DNA of 64,000 nt from Fimbriosthenelais zetlandica (lineage: Eukaryota), in the NCBI GenBank assembly GCA_977030845.1, contig OZ365112.1, forward strand, positions 23,312,001 through 23,376,000, written 5' to 3'. This document shows positions 3,001 to 46,120 of this stretch, one piece after another. A model generated the notes under the pieces. That model worked only from the letters and a program-made list of their open reading frames with translations. It was not told the DNA's origin and ran no database searches. Both the position numbers and the translations under genes were made by a program. Numbering within the stretch: position 1 is the stretch's first letter; each line of letters begins with the position of its first letter.

Positions 3001-5737
3001 CAATGATCCCTATCGAACAGAATCAGAAAAGCTTCAAGAATAATAGTGGCATGTGTCGGGGTCGACATGAGCAGTTCAAAAAGGGCCTACTGTACTCTGA
3101 GCCGATATGAGCAGGTCGTTAAATTATGGACTGAAAGCGTTGTTTGGGTTAGTGGAGTTTCGCTTAGGAAGCAGACCCCCATTTGTTTATGTATACATTT
3201 GTCTAATTGGTTTATGTGTGATGGGCGCGAAGGGCAAAGACAATAGGCATAAGGTGGAAGGGTAATGAGCAGTTCATAACCGTTCTAATGACCTGTGAGC
3301 AGATGTGAGCATATCATGACCTAGTAGTCAGAAGGCAATGATCCCTATCGAACAGTATCAGAAAAGCTTCAGGAATAATATTGGCATGTGTTCGTGTCGA
3401 CATGAGCAGTTCAAAAAGGGTCTACTGTACTCTGAGCAGATATGAGCAGGTCGTTAAATTATGGACTGAAAGCATTGATTGGTTTAGTGGAGTTTCTGTT
3501 AGGAAGCAGACCCTCATTTGTGCATGTATACATTTGTCTAATTGGTTTATGTGTAATGGGCGCGAAGGGCAAAGACAATAGACATAAGGTGGAAGGGTAA
3601 TGAGCAGTTCATAACCATTTTAATGACCTCTGAGCAGATGTGAGCATATCATGACCCAGTTGTCACAAGCCAATGACCCATATCGGACATAATCAGAAAA
3701 GCTTCATGAATAATAGTGGCATGTGTCGGGGTCGTCATGAGCAGTTCAAAAAGGGTCTACTGTACTCTGAGCAGATATGAGCAGGTCGTTAAATTATGGG
3801 CTGAAAGCACAGGTTGGGTTAGTGGAGTTTCGGTTAGGAAGGAGACCCCCATTTGTGCATGTATACATTTGTCTAATTGGTTTATGTGTAATGGGCGCGA
3901 AGGGCAAAGACAATAGACATAAGGTGGAAGGGTAATGAGCAGTTCATAACCATTTTAATGACCTCTGAGCAGATGTGAGCATATCATGACCCAGTTGTCA
4001 GAAGCCAATGACCCATATCGGACATAATCAGAAAAGCTTCATGAATAATAGTGGCATGTGTCGGGGTCGTCATGAGCAGTTCAAAAAGGGTCTACTGTAC
4101 TCTGAGCAGATATGAGCAGGTCGTTAAATTATGGACTGAAAGCACAGGTTGGGTTAGTGGAGTTTCGCTTAGGAAGCAGACCCCCATTTGTGCATGTATA
4201 CATTTGTCTAATTGGTTTATGTGTAATGGGCGCGAAGGGCAAAGACAATAGACATAAGGTGGAAGGGTAATGAGCAGTTCATAACCATTTTAATGACCTC
4301 TGAGCAGATGTGAGCATATCATGACCCAGTTGTCAGAAGCCAATGACCCATATCGGACATAATCAGAAAAGCTTCATGAATAATAGTGGCATGTGTCGGG
4401 GTCGTCATGAGCAGTTCAAAAAGGGTCTACTGTACTCTGAGCAGATATGAGCAGGTCGTTAAATTATGGACTGAAAGCACAGGTTGGGTTAGTGGAGTTT
4501 CGCTTAGGAAGCAGACCCCCATTTGTGCATGTATACATTTGTCTAATTGGTTTATGTGTAATGGGCGCGAAGGGCAAAGACAATAGACATAAGGTGGAAG
4601 GGTAATGAGCAGTTCATAACCATTTTAATGACCTCTGAGCAGATGTGACCATATCATGACCCAGTTGTCAGAAGCCAATGACCCATATCGGACATAATCA
4701 GAAAAGCTTCATGAATAATAGTGGCATGTGTCGGGGTCGTCATGAGCAGTTCAAAAAGGGTCTACTGTACTCTGAGCAGATATGAGCAGGTCGTTAAATT
4801 ATGGACTGAATGCACAGGTTGGGTTAGTGGAGTTTCGCTTAGGAAGCAGACCCCCATTTGTGCATGTATACATTTGTCTAATTGGTTTATGTGTAATGGG
4901 CGCGAAGAGCAAAGACAATAGACATAAGATGGAAGGGTAATGAGCAGTTCATAACCGTTCTAATGACCTCTGAGCAGATGTGAGCATATCATGACCTAGT
5001 AGTCAGAAGGCAATGATCCCTATCGAAGAGAATCAGAAAAGCTTCAAGAATAATAGTGGCATGTGTCGGGGTCGACATGAGCAGTTCAAAAAGGGCCTAT
5101 TGTACTCTGAGCAGATATGAGCAGGTCGTTAAATTATGGTCTGAAAGCATTGATTTGGTTAGTGGAGTTTCGGTTAGGAAGGAGACCCCCATTTGTGCAT
5201 GTATACATTTGTCTAATTGGTTTATGTGTAATGGGCGCGAAGGGCAAAGACAATAGACATAAGGTGGAAGGGTAATGAGCAGTTCATAACCATTTTAATG
5301 ACCTCTGAGCAGATGTGAGCATATCATGACCCAGTTGTCAGAAGCCAATGACCCATATCGGACATAATCAGAAAAGCTTCATGAATAATAGTGGCATGTG
5401 TCGGGGTCGTCATGAGCAGTTCAAAAAGGGTCTACTGTACTCTGAGCAGATATGAGCAGGTCGTTAAATTATGGACTGAAAGCACAGGTTGGGTTAGTGG
5501 AGTTTCGCTTAGGAAGCAGACCCCCATTTGTGCATGTATACATTTGTCTAATTGGTTTGTGTGTGATGGGCGCGAAGGGCAAAGACAATAGACATAAGGT
5601 GGAAGGGTAATGAGCAGTTCATAACCGTTCTAATGACCTCTGAGCAGATGTGAGCATATCATGACCTAGTAGTCAGAAGGCAATGATCCCTATCGAACAG
5701 AATCAGAAAAGCTTCAAGAATAATAGTGGCATGTGTC
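1..5737. repeat. 335-bp satellite DNA array, about 17 units, continuing beyond the left edge of the window
   Basis: Near-identical units recur at an exact 335-bp period (31, 366, 701 ... 5391, 5726). Each unit contains two internal subrepeats of the form ATGAGCAGTTCA-N19-CTCTGAGCAGATRTGAGCA. Confidence 0.99.
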
Positions 5738-5738
5738 G
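5730..5738 (+). other. Left target-site duplication, CATGTGTC (8 bp; 9 bp if G5738 is counted)
   Basis: Identical to 21946-21954. An 8-11 bp TSD is characteristic of Mutator elements. Confidence 0.9.
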
Positions 5739-5890
5739 ATTGCATGACAACTCACCCCCCGGCAACTCACCCCCTTCTCCATCTCATACCCGCCCATCTC
5801 ACCCCCATGCCAACTCATCCCCCGCTCACTCATCCCCTGGTCAACTCACCCCCCTACGCATTCCCCACCCCTTCCAACTCACCCCACTAC
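5738..5890 (+). repeat. Left modular terminal inverted repeat
   Basis: Begins GATTGCATGACAACTCACCCC and contains about 8 copies of a CA(A/T)CTCAYCCC motif. It mirrors the reverse complement of 21787-21945. Confidence 0.85.
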
Positions 5891-8055
5891 GGTAGGGCCG
5901 TGCAACTGCTACCGAAGTGACACGGGTGAATGCGGTAGGTACTCACGGCTCCTTCCCATCTAAGTATGGGAAGTATCTTTTGAGTAAGCATATAATAAAA
6001 TACACATAAAGAATCTGAAAAACAAATGAATAATAATATGTTTTCACCAATCTTTTAAACCATGTTGTCATATTGAGCATCATACTTTGATTTAATTTTT
6101 CTTTTTAACTTTCCTCGTTGAACTATTGAGTATTCTTTCTATTCTCATTGTCTGAACTGCGGGTGATTTTAAGATTAATGATGAGTAGACGAGGATAGGA
6201 GGAAGTGGTGAGTGGTGAGGCTATAGGTGAGAGAATAAAAGGATGCGCACGCTGGATTGGCGCTCTCTTTGAATGCGGGTAGAGACAATGTGGACGTGTC
6301 CTTTATCTTATCCAAGATACTTCATGCTCTATATGCCTCCATCATGACAGAATCGACCAAGACATGCAGAATTGCGGTGCCTTGCCTGATATTAATTGGA
6401 TACAAATTATATAAAAATTATAATGCCATAGGCCGATAAATAATACAGGTGTGGTGTTCGTACTAATGATCGAGTGCATGGCACGTTTAGGTGGATGGAC
6501 CGACTCTTTCAGGCCATTTAATAGGCCTATAATTAAAATAAGGAACTTTGGTTTCATACCACTTCAGCCCAGCGATAAATTCAGCCACTAAAGTTAATGT
6601 GATACTTGATGATGAGAAATTAGAATTAATGATGAAAAATTGTTAAATTCATGTTGTAAATTAGTCACGAAAAAGATGCGTCGAACAATAAACTTTTGGT
6701 TAAAAAGTATTAATGACGAATATGTGGAGTAATAGGATTGATTTGGTACATTATAAGGTAAATTACAGGATAAATCGGACCTAACCTTTTGATATGCAAT
6801 AATTGAACATATATACGATTGAGTCTATTTAAGGCAAACTATACATTATTGCTGCTTCTAATACAAAAAGAAATCATGACCAGCACTCCCGTCCCTCCCT
6901 GGCTTGCATCCCTTTATATGATACCTGTCAATCACCCCAAGATACACCGAGAGAATGGTCAAAATTTTTGTCTCCCATTATAATATAGCTTCCCTATAAC
7001 TATGCAATTAAAACTATACTGTTAAAAATTGTCAAGAATTCTGCATTTTTCCCAATCTAGTCAAGTTCTATAGACTAAGATAGTTATATTATTAAAAAAT
7101 AGCATACGGTACTTATGACATAACAAATTAAAGCGAACAATATCAAGTTCCATGTGGTATTTTGTATGTATTTTTTATTCAAATGCACAACACCTACACA
7201 GTATAAAAACATAAAACATAAAAACAGTATGCAATGTATAAATTCAATATAATATCTCAGTCACCGATATTAAATAAAATTATATGCATAACAATCTGCC
7301 CAGAAATACCCCATGGCAGCAGCCAGAAATATGTGATGCAACACAAATCCAAATTTAATTCAATATAAACAATCCCACACAGAATCACCCCATCAAAATA
7401 GGCTCTGATATATCACAGTCAATTGAATACATCCCAATCTTCAATGATTTAATCCATAGCAAGTTTCCAGATATCCTTAACAGGAGGAAAGTTAAATAAT
7501 ATATCACTGTTAATCCTGTTAATGTAATTGAATATACTCTCATCTACAACGAATGTACATTGTATGCATAGAAATTGTACTGATATGCATAACAGCGTGT
7601 TGTATAATAATTTATAACAGCCGTATTAATTGTAAATGAAAATACCATCTATCAAGTTGTTTTGACAGCGAATTATTTTATACATTCAGCTTATAAATAT
7701 GTTAAAACTATAAACTATCAGCCAGTAGTCACCTGTGCGTGACCACTGTTGTGGTTACATAAATATAAATCAATGAACACACTGGAGTATAACATATTAT
7801 CCTCCTCTTTTTAAGAAATTCTTCTCTCGAAGAAACAAAACATAATTAAAAGGTTGTTACCATATTAATACCTGAATTATCCAATTACAAAAACAATACC
7901 CTGTTAACATTTCATAACTGGTTATCTTACAAAGTATTGCGAATTAAAAATAACATAATTATACCGGTAATACAGATACATGATTATACCTAAATACCGA
8001 GGAAATGACATAAAGTATTTGAAATAAAAAAATACAAACGACAGGGCAAGGGCAA

Positions 8056-8554
8056 GAATTTGACTTCAATCAAAATGATGAACTACAAAATACAAAGCCA
8101 TGTCCCAGGCCGGGCAAAGTATCGGCACTTCCCACACATGCACCTGAGACATGAAGAATTGAACTTCAATCAAAATGATGAACTACAAAATACAAAGCCA
8201 TGTCCCAGGCCGGGCAAAGTATCAGCACTTCCCACACATGCACCTGAGACATGAAGAATTGAACTTCAATCAAAATGATGAACTACAAAATACAAAGCCA
8301 TGCCCCAGGCCGGGCAAAGTATCAGCACTTCCCACACATGCACCTGAGACATGAAGAATTGAACTTCAATCAAAATGATGAACTACAAAATACAAAGCCA
8401 TGCCCCAGGCCGGGCAAAGTATCAGCACTTCCCACACATGCACCTGAGACATGAAGAATTGAACTTCAATCAAAATGATGAACTACAAAATACAAAGCCA
8501 TGCCCCAGGCCGGGCAAAGTATCAGCACTTCCCACACATGCACCTGAGACATGA
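8056..8554. repeat. 100-bp tandem repeat, about 5 copies, just downstream of the transposase stop codon (putative 3' UTR)
   Basis: CAAAATGATG occurs at 8071, 8171, 8271, 8371 and 8471. The copies are nearly identical. Confidence 0.97.
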
Positions 8555-8581
8555 AAATAACAACAGGAATAAAGTGACCGA

Positions 8582-9889
8582 CTATATCACAGGTCCATAG
8601 ACTTTGCTGACAGCCTTGAGTACCTGGTAGGGAGTCTTCTCCTTTGTCAGGTACTGGTTCCAGATAGAGCTGATGACACCTTGGCATGTTTTGAACCGTT
8701 TTCTCTGGTGCCTGCGAAGCTGATCTTCACTCACAAGTACCATCTGTAGGGATACATATGTGGCCTCACTGTGAAGAAGATTGATCAGCTTGTAAACACC
8801 AAGAGTGCCGTTGTTAGCACGGCCATTCATGCGCTTGTGCCAACCTTCCGTGTCGTTGTTGGTCCGGATAGCTTTCTTGAAAACAGTCCAAGAGTCAGGA
8901 GGCCAGAAGCTGCTCTCTACCCAGGTGTTCCTCACATACGATAGAAGACGTTGGAGCAACTCGTCAGTCGGATCTACCCTCTGGCAGAGGTTATCAAAGG
9001 CGTCCGGAATGTCTGCTGCCATGAGGAACGGGAGTGCCAGGAGATGTCGAACAAACTTGTGGACTGCATCATCCTTGGTATAGTGAGACTGCAGTCCTAC
9101 TTTTGCGACATATCTCCATACACTCTGCGTCCAATGGAACACACATCCTGACACCTTGACACCAATGAAGACCTGTCGGATAGCCGACCAACAAGCTGCT
9201 TCAAAGTCTGCCACAATCTCTCGCAGTCGGAGGGATTGAGGGAGAGTATCCTTGACAGACTGGAGAACATGGACGTAGTCCTCCTTCCTTCGGCTGCTCA
9301 TGAAAACAAAGACCAATGGTACCTGCTTTATAGAGTCATCAGACTCTAAGAAGCCATGAATGGACCAAAGCTGCACAAAGGGACGGGCAATAATCTTAAA
9401 GGTGCCATCAACATACCACACAGGACACTTACGGAGGAGCTGCAACTGGGTGGTTGAAGCAAACACCATGTGTCTGCTCTCTCCCACCCATAGGTCCTTA
9501 ATCAGGAAGTTCTCAGGTATGTGGTCGGTGATGGTCTCAAAGTTTATGTCCGTCGGCTCTTTGGGCAGAAGCACCTGACGAGCTCTCTGAGCAGTTCTAA
9601 GCAGGTTTGATGGATTGACTCTGCTGCCAGATGGTTCGCTGCCTGTACCCATATACTTTATCATTTGCTCCTGGACAATCGCCTGAGCCGGTCGATTCAG
9701 GTTAGCCTTAGCCTCTTGCTTGATGGCAGTTTTGGTGTATATGGCATTGGCTAAGCCAGGTTTACCACAGTGGGTGTGGCCCACACTGCCTCGGATGTAC
9801 TCATCCCCCACTTGTGTCACTGCAGATCGACAGCGAACACCATCTTGCTGGAATGAGCACACCCACCTTGTGGTGTTGCTCGACTTTTT
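8582..9889 (-). CDS. Exon 3 of the transposase gene: C-terminal half of FLYWCH plus the MULE DDE catalytic domain
   Basis: Acceptor TATTTTCAG, then KKSSNTTRWVCSFQQDGVRCRSAV...GHTH (FLYWCH W-x-C...C...H-x-H). Catalytic motifs WYVDGTFK, VADFE, GCVFHWTQ (CxxH) and NNDTEGWH are present. The frame is open to the stop at 8582. Confidence 0.95.
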   Translation of the reverse strand, partial: KKSSNTTRWVCSFQQDGVRCRSAVTQVGDEYIRGSVGHTHCGKPGLANAIYTKTAIKQEAKANLNRPAQAIVQEQMIKYMGTGSEPSGSRVNPSNLLRTAQRARQVLLPKEPTDINFETITDHIPENFLIKDLWVGESRHMVFASTTQLQLLRKCPVWYVDGTFKIIARPFVQLWSIHGFLESDDSIKQVPLVFVFMSSRRKEDYVHVLQSVKDTLPQSLRLREIVADFEAACWSAIRQVFIGVKVSGCVFHWTQSVWRYVAKVGLQSHYTKDDAVHKFVRHLLALPFLMAADIPDAFDNLCQRVDPTDELLQRLLSYVRNTWVESSFWPPDSWTVFKKAIRTNNDTEGWHKRMNGRANNGTLGVYKLINLLHSEATYVSLQMVLVSEDQLRRHQRKRFKTCQGVISSIWNQYLTKEKTPYQVLKAVSKVYGPVI

Positions 9890-10119
9890 CTGAAAATAGA
9901 GAAATATGAAATATTAATAATATTATACAAGACAGATTTGGTGAGCTGCATTCAGTTATTAAAGCAACCCTATATAACTATACCCCCAGAGGTATGGAGA
10001 AATCTTTATTATCTCAACTTGCAGATAGAAAGTATTGAATAAAGTATGTACAGTCGCAGTAGAACTTAAATAACATTATGTGCTTCTAGACACACTTTAT
10101 AACAACATAACTTATTGAC

Positions 10120-12469
10120 ATAGGAGTGTCCCATGTTGTCTACGAGAAGGTTCCCTCCTCTCTGTGTCCCTCCCACGACAATCGTGAAGGTCAGGGATAG
10201 CTGGCTGGCATCATGGTTGTTTGTGTTAATGGGTGCGTCTGGTGATGTGTTGTTGTTTCTTGCTATTGTTGAGGTAGATGTGGCTGGCAGTGAAACATCA
10301 TCCTGGAGTGTAATGTCTATGTGATGTCTATTGGTAGGTGGTGGTCTGAGTGGGGGTGGAGATGGAGATGGTGCGGCTCTTCTGTTTTGGCGCCGAGCAC
10401 GGGAGGTGGGTGGGGGTGGAGATGGTGATTGTGGAGAGGGTGGAGATTGTAGTGGGGGAGATGGAGATGGCGCGGCTCTTCTTGTTTGAGCACGGGAGGT
10501 GGGTGGGGGTGGAGATGGTGATTGTGGTGAGGATGGAGATTGTAGTGGGGGAGATGGAGATGGCGCGGCTCTTCGGTTTTGGCGCCGAGCACGGGAGGTG
10601 GGTGGGGGTGGAGATGGTGATTGTGGTGAGGATGGAGATTGTAGTGGGGGAGATGGAGATGGCGCGGCTCTTCGGTTTTGGCGCCGGGCACGGGAGGTGG
10701 GTGGGGGTGGAGATGGTGATTGTGGTGAGGATGGAGATTGTAGTGGGGGAGATGGAGATGGCGCGGCTCTTCGGTTTTGGCGCCGGGCACGGGAGGTGGG
10801 TGGGGGTGGAGATGAAGATGGCGCGGCTCTTCGGTTTTGGCGCCGAGCACGGGAGGTGGGTGGGGGTGGAGATGGTGATTGTGGTGAGGATGGAGATTGT
10901 AGTGGGGGAGATGGAGATGGCGCGGCTCTTCGGTTTTGGCGCCGGGCACGGGAGGTGGGTGGGGGTGGAGATGGTGATTGTGGTGAGGATGGAGATTGTA
11001 GTGGGGGAGATGGAGATGGCGCGGCTCTTCGGTTTTGGCGCCGGGCACGGGAGGTGGGTGGGGGTGGAGATGAAGATGGCGCGGCTCTTCGGTTTTGGCG
11101 CCGAGCACGGGAGGTGGGTGGGGGTGGAGATGGTGATTGTGGTGAGGATGGAGATTGTAGTGGGGGAGATGGAGATGGCGCGGCTCTTCGGTTTTGGCGC
11201 CGGGCACGGGAGGTGGGTGGGGGTGGAGATGGTGATTGTGGTGAGGATGGAGATTGTAGTGGGGGAGATGGAGATGGCGCGGCTCTTCGGTTTTGGCGCC
11301 GGGCACGGGAGGTGGGTGGGGGTGGAGATGAAGATGGCGCGGCTCTTCGGTTTTGGCGCCGAGCACGGGAGGTGGGTGGGGGTGGAGATGGTGATTGTGG
11401 TGAGGATGGAGATTGTAGTGGGGGAGATGGAGATGGCGCGGCTCTTCGGTTTTGGCGCCGGGCACGGGAGGTGGGTGGGGGTGGAGATGGTGATTGTGGT
11501 GAGGATGGAGATTGTAGTGGGGGAGATGGAGATGGCGCGGCTCTTCGGTTTTGGCGCCGGGCACGGGAGGTGGGTGGGGGTGGAGATGAAGATGGCGCGG
11601 CTCTTCGGTTTTGGCGCCGAGCACGGGAGGTGGGTGGGGGTGGAGATGGTGATTGTGGTGAGGATGGAGATTGTAGTGGGGGAGATGGAGATGGCGCGGC
11701 TCTTCGGTTTTGGCGCCGGGCACGGGAGGTGGGTGGGGGTGGAGATGGAGATTGTGGTGAGGATGGAGATTGTAGTGGGGGAGATGGAGATGGCGCGGCT
11801 CTTCGGTTTTGGCGCCGGGCACGGGAGGTGGGTGGGGGTGGAGATGGAGATGGTGCGGCTCTTTTGTTTTGAAGCCGGGCACGGGAGGTGGGTGGGGGTG
11901 GAGATGGAGATGGTGCGGCTCTTTTGTTTTGAAGCCGGGCACGGGAGGTGGGTGGGGGTGGAGATGGAGATGGTGCGGCTCTTTTGTTTTGAAGCCGGGC
12001 ACGGGAGGTGGGTGGGGGTGGAGATGGAGATGGTGCGGCTCTTTTGTTTTGAAGCCGGGCACGGGAGGTGGGTGGGGGTGGAGATGGAGATGGTGCGGCT
12101 CTTTTGTTTTGAAGCCGGGCACGGGAGGTGGGTGGGGGTGGAGATGAAGATGGCGCGGCTCTTTTGTTTTGAAGCCGGGCACGGGAGGTGGGTGGGGGTG
12201 GAGATGGAGATGGTGCGGCTCTTTTGTTTTGAAGCCGGGCACGGGAGGTGGGTGGGGGTGGAGATGAAGATGGCGCGGCTCTTTTGTTTTGAAGCCGGGC
12301 ACGGGAGGTGGGTGGGGGTGGAGATGGAGATGGTGCGGCTCTTCTGTTTTGAAGCCGGGCACAGGAGGTGGGTGGGGGTGGAGATGAAGATGGCGCGGCT
12401 CTTCTTGCTTGTCGGTTTTGACGCCGAGCACGGGAGTTAGGCGGTAGTGGAGATATGACAGTTGTCTCC
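10120..12469 (-). CDS. Exon 2 of the transposase gene: Ser/Pro/Arg repeat linker plus the N-terminal half of FLYWCH (frame not shown in the ORF track)
   Basis: Acceptor TTTCTTTACAG|G GAG ACA. The frame reads ETTVISPLPPNSRARRQNRQARRAAPSSSPPPPTS... without stops to ...LTFTIVVGGTQRGGNLLVDNMGHSY, a typical FLYWCH start. The 3' donor position (GTCAAT at 10119) is the least certain boundary. Confidence 0.82.
10350..12420. repeat. Coding minisatellite of 60-bp and 99-bp units with a 258-bp higher-order period
   Basis: About ten 60-bp units (RAAPSPSPPPPTSRARLQNK) are followed by 99/99/60 blocks. The marker GATGAAGATGG recurs at 10811, 11069, 11327 and 11585. Confidence 0.97.
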
Positions 12470-14135
12470 CTGTAAAGAAAATGGGAAAATTAATTTGTGT
12501 TGACAGAATTGATATGTACAATAATATTTTTATTCGCATTCACGGTTTGAAGATGCGTTACTGCTAATCAAAAAGTACATGTCTGAAAGGGTTAACTTAA
12601 TAAGGTAATATCAACATTTCATGGAACACTAACTCAATCCATTTATTTATTACTGATAGACAGGCTTATTTCAATATAGAACCTGACGCAAAATAAAGAA
12701 AGGGTGCAGACAGGACTCCTTCATCTAGATAACAGGATTTAAAGATGGTGTTACATCCAATATCTAGTACCGTTTGAAAGTCAGTAATTGTACTGTAACC
12801 TTTAGAATAATGGTTGCTACTATTTGAGGGCTTATTTCTAATAATTTTTAATTTGGAAAATAGATAAAACAACATGAGTATTTAACAAATGTGAAGGTGA
12901 AAGAGATACTTCAAGTGAGATGCAAGTGTTATATCGAAGAACATTGTACCAGATTAAAGATAGATGCACATTTTTAGTACTACTTGCACATAGTTAGAGT
13001 GTAATTATTGAGGACTAACTAACTTAAGTAGATTCAGAATTTTCCAACGAGAATCCCAGATATTTACAGAATTCTTATTTTTCTTTGAGTAATTATTTCT
13101 AGCCATTGACGAAAATCTGCCAACCATTCAATGAAAGAACACTCTCTATATATCATGGATCAGTCTTCTCTTCATTCTATAAAATTTGATATGGATAAAC
13201 AGAGCACTTGTAAATCTAGTATTTTCACAATTAGTCAGTGAAGGTACAACGTATAGGGATCCTAACATTACGGGATGAAACAATAGTTAAGGATGCTATA
13301 ATCATTGTTTTTTCGGCGCGAATCCTAACTGAGAAATCAGAAGGCTATTTACTATGGTCACTTTAACCTTGAGTGAAAGATTTCTGGTTCCCCCACCTTT
13401 AATATTATCTTACTCATAAACGGGGTGGTCAGTTCCGATTGGGCATCTAGAGAATTGGACCCGCCTTGTACCCCCTCATTGGCTTCTGACTACCTCGGTC
13501 CCCACCATTCTATGAACAGTCCTTGTGGTCTGACCAACGCTACTTGTTATACATTCAGCCAGATCGATTAAAGCTACATATTAAAACTACATATTTTATA
13601 CATTCTTGAAACATACTGTTATCAAAATTTACTGTATATAAATTTTTCAACACACAACCCCCCAGAACCTATCACATGCATTCAATGAACCCCTTTCCAC
13701 CCCAAGGAGCTGACATACAGTACATTAGGTCTCATATTTTGTGAAGATGGATCGCTTCCCTGATATTATACACCCAATATATGCAAACGTACGCTCAGTC
13801 ATATGACTATTTAGGAGCTCTCGTGTTTTCACACTCCCTGTATAGTTCACAATTTATCCTATACCAAATCAGCTGTCATATAGATCGATCTTCAATACTA
13901 TAGTATATAATATATATACCTCCCTTTCAAGTTCTAATAATGTAGTCAAACATAGCCTTAAAAATAACCAACTTATTTGGAACCTTACAGACACCCTTCC
14001 GCATAAAAGTGCCCTAATAACGCCAGTGAAAATGTATACTATAAGCTTTGCACCCAGGATTTTCACCGAAGACAAACCAAAGTTAAGGCTAAAATAATTC
14101 TGCTACAAGAGCACAAAATATTTGAATAGACCGAG

Positions 14136-14469
14136 TTTATCCATGCACATCAATCCATGAAATTGAATCGAAAAAAGAAATAAAACAACATCTTAAACAA
14201 AAACCAAAACTCTTGGAGAAACTTTCAATTCCAGGTTCTGAATGTTAGCTTAATCCAAATATTATCCACATCACTTAAGGCTAATTAAATGACTATATAA
14301 CCGTAAACATGAAAGCACTGTAAAAGCATTATAAACCCTGTGATCTTTGTGAATACCAACTCAAAGTTAAATATAACTATCCATCGCCCCCAACGGGTGC
14401 TCTCTTACCATAAACTCCTTATATTGACTAATGAATTTAAAGATTGCATATTGTGCCATTAGCTTGCTA
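14136..14469 (+). repeat. Intronic direct repeat, copy 1 (~335 bp; partner at 15703-16038)
   Basis: TTTATCCATGCACATCAATCCATGAAATTG...GTGCCATTAGCTTG is nearly identical in both copies. A short upstream block is also shared (14037-14062 vs 15667-15692). Confidence 0.95.
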
Positions 14470-14533
14470 ATGTCGCACCTCATTCCAAATCCATTTGGTT
14501 GTTGAGGCTCCCACCTCCATGGTCTCTACTCCG

Positions 14534-15056
14534 CCACCCCGAGGAGGCAGCCTCGGGGTGGGAGGGAGGAAGCAATCTGGCAGTTCTGCCTTTTTCATAA
14601 TACTTCCAAACCATTTTTAATATCTAAAAACACTATAAATGACCTCAAACATAGAATATATCAATATAACACATAGCAAACAATACCAATTTCAAATACC
14701 AAACAATATCCAGACCAATATACCTCTGTCACAGAGCATGTAGAAAGTTGAGGGCAATCCCCTCGTCATTTCCAACAGTGAATAAATATCTGTTTTAGCC
14801 CATAATCATTCATTTTAATATACTTTGAGATTTCTTTTGATAGCCTCGTAATGAAAAACTTACATGTGAGGACAGAAGTATATACTATAAACATTCTACC
14901 ACACACACTCATTACTGTAATAATATTAATCTACCCTCTGCTTATACTGTACTCCACCGACTTCCAGACGTCTATTTCTCAGTATATCCAACCTCTAAAA
15001 CCCGTCTAACATTACATGTCTAATTCCCAACATGTCAGATACCTATCTCTACCACT
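14534..15056 (+). repeat. Dispersed repeat segment in intron 1, homologous in inverted orientation to 45008-45862
   Basis: Shared blocks include ATATCTAAAAACACTATAAATGAC, ACATGTGAGGACAGAAGTATAT and CCTCTAAAACCCGTCTAACATTACATGTCTAAT. Confidence 0.92.
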
Positions 15057-15702
15057 TTTATATATAATTTATATTTATATACTCTTCACTACAATATATA
15101 TATGAACAAATACTATCTGATTAAGCAAAGTTGAAAATGTATGTAATGTATGATAAAATACTGTTCCATGCCCGTAACACCATCACTTTATTATAAATCC
15201 TTTACCAATATAGACTGAGCCCCCCCCCCCCCCAAACCCTACCCCCTTCCAATCCTTCTCCTTAAAGTCTGAGGTATACGAACATATCTGTTAAAGTGAG
15301 AACCACTGATCCAATAAATGAAAATACTATTTACCTTATTAATGCACACAATACAGTGTACCATTACACGAAAGTGATTGGATACCTGTATCAGGATAAA
15401 TCCATCTTAATCACTCCACACATTTAAAATTGGACAGTAAAAACACTTTAACAAATAGGTCATTTTGATAAAACAGAATTATTTTATGTTAACTATGGTA
15501 ACTTGTTTTCAATTAATTTTCATTTATTTACACTAGTTTTGAACTTGACTATTATACATGTAAACCTGGATGCCCATGGAAACCAGGCTTTATGCCTAAT
15601 GAATTCAGGAGGGGGGGGATGACTAAAATGTATCCTAACTACAGCCCCGATGGTAAGGTGCCCTAATACTATAAGCTTTGCGCCCAGGATTTTTTGTGCA
15701 TT

Positions 15703-16038
15703 TTTATCCATGCACATCAATCCATGAAATTGAATCGAAAAAAGAAATAAAACAACATATTAAACAAAGACCAAAACTCTTGGAGAAACTTTCAATTCCA
15801 GGTTCTGAATGTTAGCTTAATCCAAATATTATCCACATCACTTAAGGCTAATCAAATGACTATATAACCGTAAACATGAAAGCACTGTAAAAGCATTATA
15901 AACCCTGTGATCTTTGTGAATACCAACTCAAAGTTAAATATAACTATCCATCGCCCCCAACGGGTGCTCTCTTACCATAAACTCCTTATATTGACTATTG
16001 AATTTAAAGATTGCATATATATGGTGCCATTAGCTTGT
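15703..16038 (+). repeat. Intronic direct repeat, copy 2
   Basis: Near-identical to 14136-14469. Confidence 0.95.
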
Positions 16039-16574
16039 TAACACATGGCTGACACATGGGCGCAGCTTTGACATTCTATGATCATTAGTTACAACCAAAC
16101 CCAATTTTTCAAGTGGAAATATACTGACTGCATTATAATTTACCTATTCAGGTTATTGTTTTTCATATGCTATAGATATTTATCTACCTTTATGGATCGA
16201 ATGTTATACAGATATTCTAGCTCAATACAAATCAGCTTTTTGATTCAGGGGATTGTGCATCGTAAGAGAAGTGGAAATTCTCGCGCATTATCCCTTTTGG
16301 GAGGGCTGTAACATTGTCTATGATAAGGATATTTCAATTCAGCCTTTTGTATTGGACTCCGTGATTTTTCTACTTCTCATTTTTGCATTTAAAATAAATA
16401 GGAGTTTTCCCTATATTCAAAGTTCGCCTAAAACCCCTAACACAGGAGGTTTCAAAACGGAAACACATCTTTACAGGACCAACATTTACAAACTATCAGG
16501 TTCCCAGCAGAAAGTAAGATATGAGCAGAAAGTAGAATGACGGATTAATTCTAATGATAAGTAAAATAACTTAC

Positions 16575-17227
16575 ATTGCTTCTGAACTTCTGAGAGTAGT
16601 TTCTCTGTTGGAATTGTCAGGCTCAGGCTCTATGGTCGACTCCATATCTGCTATTGTATCCTCAATAAAGGTCAGCCGTCGGGCACCCTGGAGGCCAGCT
16701 CCCCGGCGACTCCTTGACTTTGTTCCGTTCTTTGTTCCACGCCCATAACGATTTGGGGTGGAGGTTTTTGGTGGTGTGGAGGTTTGGTTTACAGATCCAT
16801 CATCCTGGGACATATCCATTGATGCATAAGAATGTGAACTGTCCATGGATTGTTTCAGAAAACACGTACCACATTTCCAGAACCATGTTTCCCGCATGCG
16901 TTCGATCTCTGAATAATCAGTGTCCTTAAAGTCTGAACCGCACCTGAGATGGGTGAAGATGTGACACGAAGAGCATTCGATCCATTTGTGTGTATCCAAA
17001 TTCAAACCTTTCTTACAAACGGAACAAACCTGTTGGTCACTTCCGATATCACAGTTATCACATATCCATGTATTGAGTTCTCCAGCAACTAGAAGCGCAG
17101 AGAACTTTCTACGGGAAAAAGATGTCCCACACGTTCTGTGGTAGAACCTTGGACAGGTTGAGCATTGAAGATTCAGCTGTGACTTGCATGATATGTTTTT
17201 GTCGCATCCGTAACACCTGACCTTCAT
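16575..17227 (-). CDS. Exon 1 of the transposase gene: two tandem PHD (C4HC3) zinc fingers plus a basic/serine-rich segment
   Basis: ATG at 17227. Finger 1: CYGC...CSTC...HRTC...WICDNC. Finger 2: CSVC...CSSC...HLRC...WKCGTC. The exon ends GCA AT|GTAAGT, a consensus phase-2 donor that matches the phase of the 12469 acceptor. Confidence 0.88.
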
Positions 17228-17239
17228 CTTGGTTCGTAC

Positions 17240-17470
17240 AGTAGTGACGGTGGCTTAACCGCAGATAATACTTTTTATAGCTGGAATGGTGTCACTGTCG
17301 CACCTCATTCCGAATCCAAATGGTTGTTGAGGCTCCCACCTCCATGGTCTCTACTCATCTCCCCCACCCCTCCTGCCACACCCTCGCACCCATGCAACCC
17401 ATATCCAAACTCCGCCCACCCCCAGCCCGGTTTCTCCCGCTTCCGCTCTTCCCTCTTCCCGGTATAGAGA
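17240..17470 (-). promoter_or_regulatory. Putative promoter of the PHD-transposase gene
   Basis: On the minus strand: TATAAAAAG at 17279-17271, an Inr-like TCACT about 30 nt downstream, ATG 45 nt after the TATA, and an upstream GC-rich segment with GGGCGG and CGGAAG motifs. Confidence 0.55.
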
Positions 17471-19885
17471 GTAGGCCTATGTGGGGATTATTGGGAAAAC
17501 AGGGAGATATATTACACAAATCTGGAGAACAGGAAAGAGAACATATTGCACTACGTTTTTCAAAATGTTGGAGTTTGGAATGTTATAATTATCTTTTTGA
17601 GGGTGCAGTATTTTATTAAAATTTATGGAAGGGTAATCGGGGGCAATGCCTCGTGGGGGTCTTTACCCATGCTAGGTAAATATGAATGACCATATTAATT
17701 AATTATGACCAAGTAAAATCCCGTGATCAATATTTTAGAGCTTTGCATTTTAATTAAAATGTCTTCGTTATATTTCGTTATATTTAAAAACGCCCACATA
17801 TAATGCATAATTATAATGCCTTATATTGCATGCGATTGGGGAAATCTGAAGGGGAGGGGCCAGACAGCGAGGGTCACTGACTAACTCACTCATTATACGT
17901 CTGATGTAGTTGTAGGCCTAAACAACTCAAGGGCTCGAACTGTATTACCATAAGCAACGCATCTATATCACCAGTAACGAATGACAATTAGTATATTGTC
18001 GTCACCTTTCATAAAATGTCGTAAGTTTATAAGGGTGTGTGTCTTTGAGTGACCACTTCTAACTCAGCTATAAACATGGTATCAATTAGCACTTTCGCTT
18101 GATGCCCAACCACTTACCTAACACTTCCCTTTCATACGCCCTTATGGCATACCGAATCAAATATCAAGGCAAGATTAATATCGATGTCAATGAGTTTTAT
18201 CATCAATTCACAAGGCATAGGCTTTGACAATGTTGAGAAAAGTTATCAGTTATGCTAAAAGTACATGCAGTATTAGTAGACTAGAATTTTTCTTTTGTAT
18301 TCCTTTACATTTTTTTCTGATGAAAAAACATTGTATGTAACAGTATTCCCTCATGTTGTTATTGTTTTATTTTCATCATAATTACTGTTTTATTATAATG
18401 ATATTAAATATATAAAGAAAATATGGTATATTTAAAGACAGGGATTCATAATCATTTACTTTATAATGGCCTCTGCATGTATATGCCTGCATGCATGTAA
18501 TTGGTATCTTGAATGTGAATTCCCCCCCTCGCCCCCTCTCAGCTTCGATGGGGTGGGTGGGGCGGGGGCGATGGTCACAGCAACGAGCTAGGCATACTCC
18601 TTGGGTTACAGTAAAGCGTGCAGGAGGCGCACGCGGAGTGCCAGGCTGGGTCCTGGCCGGGTGGGGGCGCTGGGCGGTAGGGGTACCAGGAGGAGGAAGG
18701 TAAATAGGATACATGAGAAGGGCAATGATAGGGACAGAAGCGGACAATTAATTAACACCAGTCCCACACATTACTTCTTAGGTCATCACACGTGGCCATC
18801 GATAGGAGCCATTTAGTATTATCTTGACCCCTCATATAATGTTATTTGATGTGCTCCTGGCATAGCCAAGGGTGGTCATTTTCACACCCGCCAGTGAACA
18901 TGGGATCAATAAGCCTAAACCTTATCTCTTCGCTTTTATAAGTACAGTAGACTTGACACAAGTTCTATGAATATCGTATGAGATTTTTATAATACCAACA
19001 TTAATGTTAGGTACTATGGTAGAAATTTTAAAATCGTTATTTTATCAAAGATTGGATTTTCGGCCAAATTACACAAAGCGATTTCAACTGAGTGAATAAC
19101 TTTATCCATTCAAAAGTTATCGGAGATTGACCGGCCAAAAAATTGCCATTTTTTCTCGCTTCTTTACTATAGGCCAGCGGAGGATATTTATTGGGATTGT
19201 CACATCACCTGCATTGATCGAATTTGCCATGTGACCGGAAACAAGAAATCAATTCTCCTGCGCCTTAAAGGATTGCTGCTAAATTATAATTTTAATAACG
19301 GCTCTTTCATCTACACATCTTAAGTAACATATAGGTTTTAATAACTAAAATTAATGTTTCGGTTTGGGGTTTTCTCACATAGCGCAGCGGCCGGTCACTT
19401 TCTGGGTAATGCCATACCTTATTAGCCTAAAAAGACTGCATGTTCTAATACAAATAGAAATTACTTATTGTTGGGCAAAAATGTCTGAAAAAGCCGCCTT
19501 GATCATCATCAGTCTGTAATTCTGCCTCTTGAGAAATGAGAAGGTTCAACGGAACATCGGGCCTATTTAGTAGATTGGAATTGCCAGGCTGATCACTTGC
19601 CAAATATAACAGCGAAAAATGGGACGAGTTTGATGATACTTAGAAGGTTAGAAGAGAATAATATAATATTTTGATATAAAATCAAGATATGATATTTGTT
19701 TGAGAAATAATTATTTTTACTCCTACTTCCCATATTGGTTCTTATATTGTTTTTTTTTTAATTTTCTTCTGAGGCGACACCATGTATTGGCAGACTTGCC
19801 TTTTTTGCTATTAACTTTGGCACATGAATGGAATGAAATTCTAACCCACGAAATATGTTAGGCTACATTGGGCATCATGACAATT

Positions 19886-19995
19886 CAGGGTTTCCAAACT
19901 CATGGAGAATCCCTGAAATCCTTAGAAAAAGAGTTGCCCTGGAATGTCCTGGAAAAGTCCTTAAATTTTGTCATTATTGCAAAAATTCTGGAAAT
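19886..19995 (+). mobile_element. Fragment resembling the end of a small non-autonomous DNA transposon (MITE)
   Basis: CAGGGTTTCC start followed by repeated (G/T)CCTGGAA/CCTTGAA-type subterminal motifs. No partner end was found. Confidence 0.35.
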
Positions 19996-20272
19996 TAGGA
20001 CTAAACAGTCATTTTTCTTACAACACACTGCATTAATATCCAGAGGGCCGAGTGTTTTCTATAAGAAATTACGTCCGGACATTATTTTGTTACTTGAAAG
20101 AAGGACAGTTTATAGTCCCTATATGGATATTGCTATGCTACAAATTAGGACTAAATTTATATTAGTTGTCAAAGATTAAAACAAAAATCAATTCTAAAAA
20201 AAAAATGTCCCTTGGCAACGGAATAATTTTAAGGGAATAAGAGCAAAATTTGTCATTTTAGGTACTTATATT

Positions 20273-20341
20273 TAACCTAACCCTAAACCTCAACCTAACC
20301 TAATCCCTAAAATATAGACCTAACCCTAACCTAATCCCTAA
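20273..20341. repeat. Degenerate (A)ACCTA/CCCTAA low-complexity repeat
   Basis: TAACCTAACCCTAAACCTCAACCTAACCTAATCCCT...CCTAACCCTAACCTAATCCCTA, followed by a YY1-like GCCGCCATCTTG. Confidence 0.6.
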
Positions 20342-20517
20342 AGACATCAACCTGCGAGACTTGGCCGCCATCTTGGATCAGGCCCCTAAAGTGCAGTTAA
20401 GCCTAAATTCATATTTTTAATATTTTTTTTTATCCCGCCCGCCCCCGAATAATTTAGAACCATTTTGTCCGTGAACCAAACAATAAAAATGTCTGGCCTA
20501 ATTAGATAAATGTAACA

Positions 20518-20590
20518 GCGCACGGCGAGAAGCGAACCACCGACCTTTGCATTTCAGACACGACACTCTAACCGTCTGAGCCACCACGAC
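20518..20590 (-). mobile_element. tRNA-derived SINE head or degenerate tRNA-like sequence
   Basis: The minus strand reads GTCGTGG-TGGCTCAGACGGTTAGAGT...AGGTCGGTGGTTCGCTTCTCGCC, with A-box and B-box spacing. The acceptor stem does not pair, so it is not a functional tRNA. Confidence 0.65.
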
Positions 20591-20772
20591 TGGTTGGGAG
20601 GGACAGTCACTTTAGCCTCACTTATAGGGTGGAGCCCCGACCGGTCGTGCCTCCAAGGCGTGTTTTAATCAATGGAGCCACGACCGTCGTGCCAATATTC
20701 AATGGAGGCACGACCCGCTTGAGTCGTGCCTCCAAGGCCTGCAATAATCAGTGGAGCCACGACGGTCGTGCC

Positions 20773-21264
20773 AATACATACTTCGAAAAAGATATGGTAT
20801 ATATAGGCAGAGTAAATTGGAATAAATTACCTGCTAGTATACGATCAATAGATGATTACGACCTTTTTAAATCCCGGTTAAAAGTACATTTTACCAATGA
20901 TTGAGCCTTTGGTTTGGACTTATCACTACTGTAGATTTAAATTATATTTGTAAATTTTTTGTCTGACCTTTTTAAAATGTGTTGCAGCAGTGTTAATAAC
21001 AATAATGCAGAGATTAGTGGTTTTTATGGTCGCAAAGATTTGTGTTCATTTTATTTTGTGTTTAATGTCATGTTAGTAATTTGTATAATCATATATAATT
21101 GTAATTTCCTTTTTGTATCAATCAATCAATGTATTGTATTACTAATTTGTTAATTCTATAACTATACTAACTATATTGTAAATATTGTAAAGTCGGACTG
21201 CCTGAAAATACGCCGAAAGGTGGAATTGTTATAAATAAAATTGTCCTCAAAACTAAAAAAAAAA
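20773..21264 (+). mobile_element. 5'-truncated non-LTR retrotransposon 3' end (CR1/L2-like ORF2 C-terminus, AT-rich 3' UTR, poly-A)
   Basis: ...YIGRVNWNKLPASIRSIDDYDLFKSRLKVHF* matches the WNxLP...FKxxLK tail of CR1/L2-clade ORF2. AATAAA at ~21234 and an A-run at 21255-21264. Confidence 0.75.
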
Positions 21265-21271
21265 GTCGACT

Positions 21272-21360
21272 TCGGTGGCCGTGTGTTCGAATCCCACTTC
21301 TGATGTGACATTTTTACATCAATTAGTCGGTGGGTGTGGGTTCAAATCCCACTTCTGACT
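21272..21360 (+). repeat. Two tandem Pol III B-box-like modules (SINE remnant)
   Basis: GGTGGCCGTGTGTTCGAATCCCACTTCTGA and GGTGGGTGTGGGTTCAAATCCCACTTCTGA. Confidence 0.55.
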
Positions 21361-21786
21361 TGACTATTTTCACCCATTGGAGGGATTGCATTGACAGCTT
21401 TTTATTAGCCCCTAATTATTTTGCCTTTTTTTCAATATGTGTATCAGTATGTGGTATATTGGTAGGAGTGAATGTATAAGAATATGTCTTCTCCCGTCAT
21501 GAGAAATGAAAAAGTTTACTAAAATTTTCTACAGAATTTTTACTCTAATAGTAAAGCCTTTTGGATTCTATCTGCTATGCACGATGTTTTAGTCTCATAA
21601 AAATTCAGACCACCTGAAAACATACTGTCGGTAAAACCCCCAAAAGTATAATTATCTGTATGCTTAACCATAATATATCGGGCCTATGTAGGTCTACGCG
21701 CTGCGCGCTGCGGAATGAAGGGAGTAGGACTGGTAGTGTGACCGCATGTCATTGAGTGTGCTCCGGTAAACGAGGGACGTTATTCT

Positions 21787-21945
21787 CCCCTGGGGGTATG
21801 AGTTGGTTAGGGGGATGAGCTAGCCGGGGTGTGGGATGGTCGTGGGGGCGAGTTTACCAGGGGTGTGAGTTGGAGGGGGGATGACCTAGTGAAGGGAGGA
21901 GATGGGTGGGGGATGAGATGACGGGGTATGAGTTGTCGTGATACC
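21787..21945 (-). repeat. Right modular terminal inverted repeat
   Basis: The reverse complement begins GGTATCACGACAACTCATACCCC and has about 8 CA(A/T)CTCAYCCC-like motifs, mirroring the left end. Confidence 0.85.
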
Positions 21946-22066
21946 CATGTGTCGGGGTCGACATGAGCAGTTCAAAAAGGGCCTATTGTACTCTGAGAAG
22001 ATATGAGCAGGTCGTTAATTTGTGATCTGAAACAGTGGTTGTTTTTTTGGAGTTTTGGTTTTGAAG
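21946..22066 (+). repeat. Right TSD plus the remainder of the interrupted 335-bp satellite unit, degenerating towards its 3' end
   Basis: CATGTGTCGGGGTCGACATGAGCAGTTCAAAAAGGGCCTATTGTACTCTGAG... continues the unit broken at 5737. Confidence 0.95.
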
Positions 22067-22071
22067 TTCTA

Positions 22072-22137
22072 GGTAATGAACTGCTCACTTCTGCTCAGAA
22101 CTGAGTACAGCTGTTATGAACTGCTCATGATCTCCCC
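22072..22137 (-). repeat. Inverted copy of the satellite core motifs closing the array
   Basis: The reverse complement GGGGAGATCATGAGCAGTTCATAACAGCTGTACTC...TCTGAGCAGAAGTGAGCAGTTCATTACC parallels the satellite's GGGGTCGTCATGAGCAGTTCA...TGTACTCTGAGCAGA. Confidence 0.8.
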
Positions 22138-45007: not shown

Positions 45008-46120
45008 TGTGGTAGAGATAGGTATCTGACATGTTGGGGATTAGACATGTAATGTTAGACGGGTTTTAGAGGTTGGGTATAATGATAAATAGACGTCTGG
45101 GGCTCGATGGAGTACAGTATAAGCAGAGGGTAGATTAATGTTATTACAGTAATGAGTGTGTGTGGCAGTATGTTTATAGTATATGCTAGGTCTCTGGAAA
45201 ATGGGAAGAACTTTTAGTATCCGGTGCACTTTTGTCACAATAGAAAGATGAAAATTCAAACGGCAGATTTCCTAGGTTTAGTTAATCATAATGTAATATC
45301 TAAGATATAATTAATAACTATAATGATATAATTTCAAGCTTTAGGCTAATAAGTTTAATAAGTGGAATTGCACCAGTTAAGAAATATTTGTGACAGGGGT
45401 GTATCCAGGAGAATCGTAGATTGTGTGTTACTGCCTAATTCATGGGTAATTAATTGGCAGGTTGTCCATTCATGATATACTTCTGTCCTCACATGTATGT
45501 CTTTCATTGCTAGGCTAATATCAAAAGCATAAAATCTTAAAGTATATTTAGAATGTACAATTATAGGCTAAAAGGGATATTTATAAATTCAATGTTGGAA
45601 ATGACGAGGTTAATTATTGTTCTCAACTTTATATGCATGCTCTGTGACAGAAGTATATTGGTCTGGATATGTTTTGGTATTTGGAATCATACTTATATTA
45701 TTTGCTAAGTGCTATACTAGTTTTATTCTAGGTTTGAAGTCATTTATAGTGTTTTTAGATATTAGAAATGGTTTGGTACTATTATGAACATGGTATAACT
45801 GCTTTCCCTCCTCCTGGTTGCATCCCCCCTCCCAACTCGAGGCTGCCTCCTCGGGGTGGGGGAGGGAGGGTGATCACGTGGGCTAGTTGGTCGTGCCAGT
45901 GGGTAGTTGACCATTGGTCACTGATTCTCTATGAGTAGCTCCCCACAGACCAATCAGGGTTGAGGAATCGAGATGGGTAGATAGTTGAGTGGTACCTATA
46001 CACCCTTGACCCTAATTTATGTCAGAGATGAATGAGCTCACCTCCCCACTCATGGCTACCTCCTTGGGGTGGGAGGGGGTTCATTGGCTGCATGTGATTG
46101 GCTCTGGGGGTTGTGTGCTG
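45008..46120 (-). repeat. Dispersed repeat homologous to pieces of MULE intron 1 (13651-13730 and 14534-15056)
   Basis: Collinear inverted matches: 45008-45184 vs 14884-15056, 45475-45862 vs 14534-14883, and 46060-46120 vs 13651-13709. Confidence 0.88.

What the first reader, a model, noticed from the sequence alone, without database searches (positions are those of the whole stretch)
5730..21954. A complete 16.2-kb giant Mutator element defined by an exact TSD and modular motif-array TIRs
Seen: the CATGTGTC(G) duplication 16.2 kb apart, and ends that share little linear identity but both consist of about 8 CAACTCAYCCC motifs aligned on GACAACTCA 8 nt from the terminus. Only about 4.3 kb is coding; the rest is intron and cargo. 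Known: an 8-11 bp TSD and motif-rich or foldback-like TIRs are typical of Mutator/Phantom elements. Inference: the exact TSD and intact ORF suggest a recent insertion of a possibly autonomous, unusually large element, with the motifs acting as FLYWCH binding sites.
Basis: partly seen in the sequence, partly recalled or inferred. Interest (0 to 1): 0.75.

Follow-up and report, generated by a model that had tools for sequence, protein, structure and literature searches.

The report
Young giant Mutator-type jumping gene
This is a real, complete and very young 16.2-kb Mutator-type (FLYWCH/Phantom-like) cut-and-paste transposon inserted in a satellite repeat. It is well defined but belongs to a known kind, and its size comes mostly from introns, repeat arrays and other repeats nested inside it.

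Summary
An element at 5738/5739-21945 is flanked by CATGTGTC(G). The 335-bp satellite it sits in carries the uninterrupted site 13 times in phase, so the window holds its own empty site.

Both ends carry about 9 CAACTCAYCCC-like motifs at matching positions, roughly 16 bp apart, behind unlike 8-nt tips.

The genome holds three more complete paired copies with different 8-9 bp duplications:
- A 15.9-kb sibling on C30, 0.2% diverged, whose 8-bp duplication is confirmed by five paralogous empty sites.
- Two non-coding partners of 8.0 and 11.3 kb that share only the roughly 230-bp ends.

The minus strand carries a three-exon gene of about 4.3 kb: two PHD fingers, a Ser/Pro/Arg repeat linker, FLYWCH and a MULE DDE domain with all catalytic residues. 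PHD-FLYWCH-MULE proteins are common in marine invertebrates. Motif-array ends with unlike tips are published for Tm1. So this is a new member of a known kind.

One caveat on autonomy: this copy has lost the canonical donor of intron 2 (GT to TT at 10110), which two other copies keep.

FLYWCH binding to the motifs is untested, and no sequencing runs were listed. The scan had already noted the gene (s1-217046) and its linker (s1-217093) on this same window, not on other DNA.

The parts
1..5737 (+). 335-bp satellite array (about 17 units) that hosts the insertion. It continues in phase at 21946-22060.
   Evidence: TRF; in-phase empty-site word; right-flank alignment.
5730..5738 (.). Left copy of the target-site duplication, CATGTGTC(G).
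   Evidence: The final G may instead be the first base of the element.
5738..5955 (+). Left terminal region: 8-nt tip GATTGCAT, then about 9 phased CAACTCAYCCC-like motifs (5748-5885), then about 70 bp of conserved inner sequence.
   Evidence: Conserved at about 94% in the otherwise unrelated non-autonomous copies, with divergence starting right after it.
8054..8555 (.). 100-bp minisatellite, 5 units, just downstream of the transposase stop codon.
   Evidence: TRF. Present in the C30 and C25 copies too; the blastn matches suggest about one unit fewer there.
8582..9889 (-). Exon 3: C-terminal two thirds of FLYWCH, MULE DDE domain, C-terminal region and stop codon.
   Evidence: Pfam MULE E 5.7e-11; FLYWCH positions 22-62, E 3.9e-4; D161, D228, E348, C249/H252 and W334 invariant; acceptor ttttcag at 9890.
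9890..10110 (-). Intron 2. Its donor reads AAG|TTATGT in this copy and AAG|GTATGT in the C30 and C25 copies. A second change at 10095 creates an in-frame AAA|GTGTGT 15 nt downstream.
10111..12469 (-). Exon 2: Ser/Pro/Arg-rich repeat linker (tandem array 10350-12440; units of 60, 99, 159 and 258 bp) plus the N-terminal part of FLYWCH. It codes 786 aa here and 375 aa in the C30 copy.
   Evidence: tblastn to the paralogue's FLYWCH N-half gives 61.5% identity, E 9.6e-7.
12470..16574 (-). Intron 1 (4.1 kb), largely pieces of other interspersed repeats.
   Evidence: Donor AT|GTAAGT at 16574 and acceptor ctttacag at 12470 are phase-compatible. Repeat hits.
16575..17227 (-). Exon 1: ATG and two PHD-type zinc fingers. 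A TATAAAA box lies about 45 bp upstream, near 17272-17278.
   Evidence: Pfam PHD E 1.5e-5, two stretches. 100% identical in the C30 copy. Sequence.
17228..21714 (.). Region upstream of the gene. No ORF there has a significant family match; it contains pieces of at least three other repeat families.
21715..21945 (-). Right terminal region: tip GGTATCAC (read inward), then about 9 phased motifs (21795-21935) and conserved inner sequence.
21946..21954 (.). Right copy of the target-site duplication, CATGTGTC(G).

Best explanation
The stretch 5738-21945 is one complete copy of a low-copy, recently active Mutator-superfamily DNA transposon of the FLYWCH type (Phantom-like, with Tm1-like composite ends). 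It moved by DDE cut-and-paste into a satellite monomer and made an 8-9 bp staggered-cut duplication.

Shown: about 230 bp at each end is the only sequence shared with giant non-coding partner elements that have also moved recently.

Inferred: these ends are the cis-acting part, and their 16-bp phased motif arrays are probably multiple binding sites for the element's own transposase.

The transposase is read from the minus strand as three exons: two PHD fingers, a variable Ser/Pro/Arg repeat linker, FLYWCH, then a MULE DDE domain.

The 16-kb size is not gene cargo. It comes from a 4.1-kb intron, a 2.1-kb coding tandem array, a minisatellite and pieces of other repeats that were on board before the last jumps.

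This copy has lost the canonical donor of intron 2, so it may depend on transposase from the C30 sibling or on a new in-frame donor 15 nt downstream.
For: - Exact duplication and in-window empty site.
- Three further complete paired copies with their own duplications: GACATTTC, GAGACCAT(G) and CTTGCGAGA.
- Five paralogous empty sites for the C30 copy.
- The C30 copy is collinear and 99.8% identical outside the arrays.
- The C19 and C30b copies are 99.2-99.9% identical to each other and share only the ends with this copy.
- MULE, FLYWCH and PHD matches.
- DDE, C(2)H and W residues are invariant.
- Phase-compatible consensus splice sites.
- Same domain order in single-ORF paralogues and in proteins of corals, anemones, molluscs and annelids.
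- Published MULE traits: 8-10 bp TSD, long TIRs, and a Muta1 transposase that binds its ends with subterminal repeats affecting transposition (PMC5499845). Tm1 composite TIRs: PMC3169594.
Against: - No RNA or read data could be obtained, so the splice model and the expression are inferred.
- The canonical intron-2 donor is mutated in this copy.
- Binding of any domain to the motifs is untested.
- Placement inside the Phantom clade was not tested by phylogeny, because no named reference sequences were available as tool output.
- Only about 10 ends exist in the genome, so the family is small.
Confidence: 0.92

Rival explanations
1. A macrotransposon or chance bracket: two solo ends of a small non-autonomous MULE happen to flank unrelated DNA that includes a separate transposase gene, so the 16 kb is not one unit.
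For: The ends also occur around totally different 8-11 kb interiors. Solo ends exist as well.
Against: The same 16-kb interior lies between the same ends at a second site with its own 8-bp duplication and clean empty sites. Most of it is also found in a third, rearranged copy. The unit has therefore moved as a whole.
Confidence: 0.03
2. A segmental duplication or assembly artefact rather than transposition.
For: No reads could be laid on the junctions. The insertion lies in a satellite, where assemblies are fragile.
Against: The boundaries are base-precise in four copies, each with a different 8-9 bp direct repeat. The flanks of this copy rejoin into an exact in-phase satellite monomer. The flanks of the C30 copy rejoin into a known repeat.
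Confidence: 0.03
3. The element is real, but this copy is dead. The donor mutation prevents correct splicing, so it is a passive, non-autonomous passenger.
For: GT to TT at the canonical donor (10110), while two other copies keep GT. This copy also lacks about 0.73 kb that both others have, at 6208/6221.
Against: All three exons are open. Exons 1 and 3 are 100% identical in protein to the C30 copy. A second substitution creates an in-frame GT donor 15 nt downstream. This rival refines the best explanation rather than contradicting it, so its odds are not part of a sum to 1.
Confidence: 0.45

Closest known systems
Phantom family of Mutator-like elements, including Muta1 of Aedes (Marquez and Pritham 2010, as summarised in PMC6446971 and PMC3169594; PMC5499845)
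   Same: N-terminal FLYWCH finger plus MULE DDE domain. 8-10 bp TSD. TIRs of tens to hundreds of bp with subterminal repeats. A minisatellite after the transposase ORF is reported for the aphid members.
   Different: Two PHD fingers and a 375-786 aa repeat linker sit ahead of FLYWCH. The gene has three exons. The element is 16 kb, against a few kb. Clade membership was not tested by phylogeny.
Tm1 Mutator/Foldback elements of root-knot nematodes (PMC3169594)
   Same: Phantom-like FLYWCH+MULE transposase. Mostly 9-bp TSD (8-10). Composite TIRs built from a roughly 14-bp tandem motif behind unlike 7-bp tips. The ends of one element differ from each other. Non-autonomous partners share only the ends.
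   Different: The motif sequence differs, and the spacing is about 16 bp with degenerate copies rather than tight tandem repeats. There are no histone-hairpin derivatives. The element is much larger and has a PHD-linker extension.
Rehavkus elements (Repbase; PMC6446971, table 1)
   Same: [quoted passage not shown]
   Different: FLYWCH is not listed for Rehavkus in that table. The minisatellite here lies 2.3 kb from the end rather than next to the TIR. Sequence relationship was not tested.
PHD-FLYWCH-MULE proteins predicted in corals, sea anemones, bivalves, gastropods and annelids
   Same: Same domain order and 34-49% identity over the DDE exon. For example P0006, P0018 and P0014 have PHD, FLYWCH and MULE in that order.
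   Different: Those listed are 240-760 aa, but the search sees only that size range. None is closer than 49% identical. Their transposon ends are unknown here.

Membership tests
Mutator superfamily (MULE) | DDE transposase with the MULE domain | tested here: met
   PF10551 E 5.7e-11, 43.2 bits against a cut-off of 27.6. D161, D228 and E348 are invariant across 7 paralogues.
Mutator superfamily (MULE) | (C/D)(2)H motif 15-45 aa after the second D, and a conserved W before the E (PMC5499845) | tested here: met
   C249-x2-H252 lies 21 aa after D228. W334 lies 14 aa before E348. All are invariant.
Mutator superfamily (MULE) | 8-10 bp target-site duplication | tested here: met
   Four complete copies have 8 or 9 bp. 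The 8 bp of the C30 copy is fixed by five empty sites.
Mutator superfamily (MULE) | Long terminal inverted repeats (over 100 bp) | tested here: inconclusive
   The ends are inverted in motif content and register over about 150 bp, but only 54% identical. The first 38 nt look much more alike by eye. This is a composite TIR rather than a classical one.
Phantom family | FLYWCH zinc finger N-terminal to the MULE domain | tested here: met
   Exon 3 start matches PF04500 positions 22-62, E 3.9e-4; at 21 bits it is below the 23.6 cut-off because the domain is split by an intron. The N-half in exon 2 matches the paralogue's FLYWCH, E 9.6e-7. Full FLYWCH hits in paralogues. The joined exons were not scanned.
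Phantom family | Phylogenetic placement with canonical Phantom/Muta transposases (group 20 of PMC6446971) | not testable with these tools
   No named Phantom, Muta1 or Tm1 reference sequence was returned by any tool. Hits were unnamed or 'uncharacterized' proteins.
Tm1-like Mutator/Foldback structure | Composite ends made of a short repeated motif behind unlike terminal motifs | tested here: met
   About 9 motifs per end at roughly 16-bp spacing (TRF period 15), behind the tips GATTGCAT and GGTATCAC.
Rehavkus | PHD finger in the transposase and a minisatellite before one TIR | tested here: inconclusive
   PHD is present and a 100-bp x 5 minisatellite follows the ORF. It lies 2.3 kb from the end, and the relationship of the DDE domain to Rehavkus could not be tested.
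Pack-MULE | Captured host gene fragments between the ends | tested here: not met
   Interior ORFs outside the transposase gene have no significant family hit. Non-gene interior DNA matches interspersed repeats. The 8-kb partner has no ORF of 120 aa or more.

The most novel reading that the evidence does not exclude
The family is active now and its transposase works with a hypervariable coding minisatellite as linker: 786 aa here and 375 aa in a sibling that is 0.2% diverged. The 16-bp phased motif platforms let it move units of 8-16 kb, including giant non-coding partners. This copy has moved its intron-2 donor by 15 nt through a paired loss-and-gain of GT, a compensated splice site inside a transposon.
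Probability: 0.2. Interest if true: 0.5.

Novelty: new member of a known kind. Interest (0 to 1): 0.33.

Why it matters
The element gives a cleanly bounded animal Mutator family that looks recently mobile. Its pieces are an autonomous-type copy, giant non-coding partners, exact empty sites and roughly 230-bp minimal ends.

That makes it useful for annotating this genome and as a candidate for studying how FLYWCH/PHD-bearing MULE transposases recognise multi-site ends. It also shows that the 'giant' size reflects accumulated introns, arrays and nested repeats rather than captured genes.

It does not change what is known about Mutator elements.

Tried and rejected
- **Sequencing runs:** none was listed, so read laying could not be used. 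Junction-spanning reads, expression and splice joints remain untested.
- **Rest of the other copies:** The right half of the C30 copy, the left half of C30b and the ends of the paralogous MULE families could not be read. The loci were not cut out either.
- **Solved structures:** no relative of exon 3 was found (best E 0.016, unrelated).
- **Marquez and Pritham 2010:** the paper is not held, so its content is cited only through PMC6446971 and PMC3169594.
- **Pack-MULE or gene-cargo reading:** rejected.
- **Internal coding array as a bank of extra end motifs:** rejected. Motif hits with up to 1 mismatch are absent from 10350-12440, and the 71% inverted matches look like Pro/Ser codon composition.
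- **Open array frame as proof of coding:** not used. All three minus frames and two plus frames are open there. The coding call rests on splice phases, continuity into FLYWCH and the paralogues' Pro/Ser-rich linker.
- **poly(A) signal:** no AATAAA or ATTAAA was found within about 680 bp after the stop.
- **Joined spliced protein:** Exons were searched one by one by reference.
Full report
**Observation**

The 9-mer CATGTGTCG lies at 5730-5738 and at 21946-21954. The bases outside it differ on both sides.

The left flank is a 335-bp satellite of about 17 units that stops exactly at 5738. The 19-nt word that spans the site in an intact unit occurs 13 times without mismatch at 335-bp steps. The next occurrence is due at 5726, exactly where the array is interrupted; no shuffle gave a match. 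The right flank resumes the monomer from the duplicated bases for about 115 bp at 86-89% identity. The window therefore contains its own empty site. Left flank, one copy of the duplication and right flank together rebuild a satellite unit.

**The ends**

CAACTCAYCCC with up to 1 mismatch gives 14 hits in 64 kb against 1.9 expected. Ten of them lie in the outer 200 bp of the element, on opposite strands.

With degenerate copies each end has about 9 motifs at matching positions: 11, 26, 42/43, 58, 74, 89/91, 105/108, 122/124 and 138/141. Both arrays start with GACAACTCA behind unlike 8-nt tips, GATTGCAT and GGTATCAC. Global identity of the ends is only 54% over 150 nt, against 43 +/- 5% for shuffles.

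**Other copies**

Searching the whole genome with each end gave 11 and 7 places. The complete pairs are listed below.

| Copy | Position | Length | Duplication |
|---|---|---|---|
| This copy | C13 (window 5738-21945) | 16.2 kb | CATGTGTC(G) |
| C30a | C30:181951-197826 | 15.9 kb | GACATTTC |
| C19 | C19:22973101-22981078 | 8.0 kb | GAGACCAT(G) |
| C30b | C30:868554-879823 | 11.3 kb | CTTGCGAGA |

- The C30 15.9-kb copy sits in an interspersed repeat with more than 40 copies. Five of these read ...gaccta GACATTTC ataatcc... without interruption. This fixes an 8-bp duplication and shows that the element begins with G.
- By the same reading the duplication here is 8 bp, and 9 if the G is counted. 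It is 9 bp in C30b.
- The C30 copy is collinear with this one, with 15 mismatches in 7035 aligned bp outside the arrays. Exons 1 and 3 are identical in protein.
- The C19 and C30b copies are 99.2-99.9% identical to each other. They share only about 230 bp at each end with this copy, at about 94%, and similarity stops abruptly after that.
- The C19 copy has no ORF of 120 aa or more. C30b holds ORFs with reverse-transcriptase and tyrosine-recombinase domains, most likely a nested retroelement.
- This is the usual autonomous/non-autonomous pattern, and it marks the 230-bp ends as the cis-acting part.
- A third transposase-bearing copy on C25 is rearranged and frameshifted.

**The gene**

A single-ORF paralogue of 836 aa in this genome has PHD, a Pro/Ala/Ser-rich repeat linker, FLYWCH and MULE. 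Its parts map to three places on the minus strand here.

- Exon 1 runs from the ATG at 17227 to 16575 and ends AT|GTAAGT. A TATAAAA box lies about 45 bp upstream.
- Exon 2 starts after ctttacag at 12469. With the two carried bases it reads a Ser/Pro/Arg-rich frame with no stop through the 2.1-kb tandem array and on into the N-terminal part of FLYWCH, up to ...GHSYVNK at 10111.
- Exon 3 starts after ttttcag at 9889 and runs to the stop at 8582.

The exons sum to 4320 nt.

- Pfam finds two PHD stretches in exon 1 (E 1.5e-5), FLYWCH positions 22-62 at the start of exon 3 (E 3.9e-4) and MULE (E 5.7e-11).
- D161, D228, E348, the C(2)H motif and W334 are invariant among seven paralogues, as MULE and hAT enzymes require (PMC5499845).
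- With the junction VNK|KKS, the spacing between the FLYWCH Gly and Trp is 14 residues, the same as in the intronless paralogue.

**A flaw in this copy**

In the C30 and C25 copies the intron-2 donor is AAG|GTATGT. Here it is AAG|TTATGT, with T at 10110. This copy also has G for C at 10095, which makes an in-frame AAA|GTGTGT 15 nt downstream.

If that donor is used, five residues (LCCYK) are added inside FLYWCH. If it is not, the message is mis-spliced. Both changes are specific to this copy, and they lie within 16 bp in a sequence that differs from its sibling at only 0.2% of sites. I cannot tell whether this is compensation or chance.

This copy also lacks about 0.73 kb that the other two copies have between 6208 and 6221. 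The linker codes 786 aa here and 375 aa in the C30 copy, in frame in both.

**Why it is so large**

- Intron 1 (12470-16574) and the 4.5 kb upstream of the gene contain pieces of several other interspersed repeats with many copies at 78-97% identity.
- These pieces are shared by the C30 copy, so they were on board before the last jumps.
- The other interior ORFs have no significant family match.
- The 'cargo' is therefore junk and introns, not captured genes.
- The arthropod survey gives 1.4-10 kb for complete MULEs (PMC13359780). 16 kb is large for an animal MULE, but the reason is ordinary.

**Comparison with known families**

- Phantom elements are defined by FLYWCH plus MULE, with 8-10 bp TSD and variable TIRs. 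The aphid members have a minisatellite after the ORF (PMC6446971, table 1; PMC3169594). The 100-bp x 5 minisatellite here (8054-8555) lies right after the stop codon.
- Tm1 of root-knot nematodes is a Phantom-like element whose TIRs are arrays of a roughly 14-bp motif behind unlike 7-bp tips, with mostly 9-bp TSDs and partners sharing only the ends (PMC3169594). That is the same design as here.
- For Muta1, purified transposase binds the ends, and the subterminal repeats affect transposition (PMC5499845).
- Rehavkus shares the PHD finger and the minisatellite (PMC6446971).
- A protein search found PHD-FLYWCH-MULE proteins at 34-49% identity in corals, anemones, bivalves, gastropods and annelids. 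The domain order is therefore widespread.
- Placement within the Phantom clade was not tested, because no named references were available.

**Mechanism**

Shown:
- A DDE MULE gene with intact catalytic residues.
- Precise ends, 8-9 bp duplications and empty sites.
- Recent movement of both the coding and the non-coding subfamilies.

Inferred:
- Cut-and-paste with flank hairpins, as in Muta1.
- The motif arrays as multiple transposase binding sites.
- FLYWCH as the domain that reads them. Some FLYWCH domains act in protein contacts instead (PMC3169594).

**Limits**

- No sequencing run was listed, so expression, splicing and junction-spanning reads are untested.
- A note from another agent calls this a worm genome (s1-210725). 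I did not verify the species.

**Verdict**

This is a new member of a known kind, of modest interest.

Noticed in passing
L053:9400-9440 (G000:C25:23072419-23072421): In the rearranged C25 copy a right end (242 bp) abuts a left end head to tail with no duplication between them. The right end has lost its last 3 nt and the joint shares GAT. This looks like joined transposon ends (a circle-type or tandem junction), with the rest of that element inverted 4.5 kb away.
   Followed up: partly
L051:1001-8979 and L050:951-10000 (C19:22973101-22981078; C30:868554-879823): There is a giant non-coding partner subfamily of 8.0 and 11.3 kb, 99.2-99.9% identical to each other, that shares only the roughly 230-bp ends with the coding element. 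The longer one holds ORFs with reverse-transcriptase and tyrosine-recombinase domains, DIRS-like.
   Followed up: partly
window 10095-10117: Three of the five differences between this copy and the C30 copy in 1.8 kb cluster within 23 bp at the exon 2/intron 2 border. They are a synonymous GTC/GTT, the loss of the donor GT, and the gain of an in-frame GT 15 nt downstream.
   Followed up: partly
window 6208-6221: This copy lacks about 0.73 kb that both the C30 and the C25 copies carry at this point, so it is probably a deletion here.
   Followed up: no
window 21946-22130: The satellite ends about 115 bp to the right of the insertion, and a short piece of it follows in inverted orientation (22069-22130). 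The array also has a strong GC skew of about +0.25 over 1-5000.
   Followed up: no
L057-L062 (for example G000:C39:1498304-1502892): The C30 copy sits inside an interspersed repeat of at least 1.5 kb that has more than 40 copies at about 88-94% identity. Its kind was not determined.
   Followed up: no
L022-L040 (for example G000:C29:9321329-9322612; C10:13195019-13196296): Several other PHD-FLYWCH-MULE families live in this genome. One, at 41% identity, has four intronless open frames of 831-852 aa. Another, at 47% identity, has its PHD exon 5-12 kb upstream of the DDE exon, so it also has large, split genes.
   Followed up: partly
window 45009-46121: A copy of one of the repeats nested in intron 1 of the element lies elsewhere in the same window (79-93% identity to 14529-15055).
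   Followed up: no
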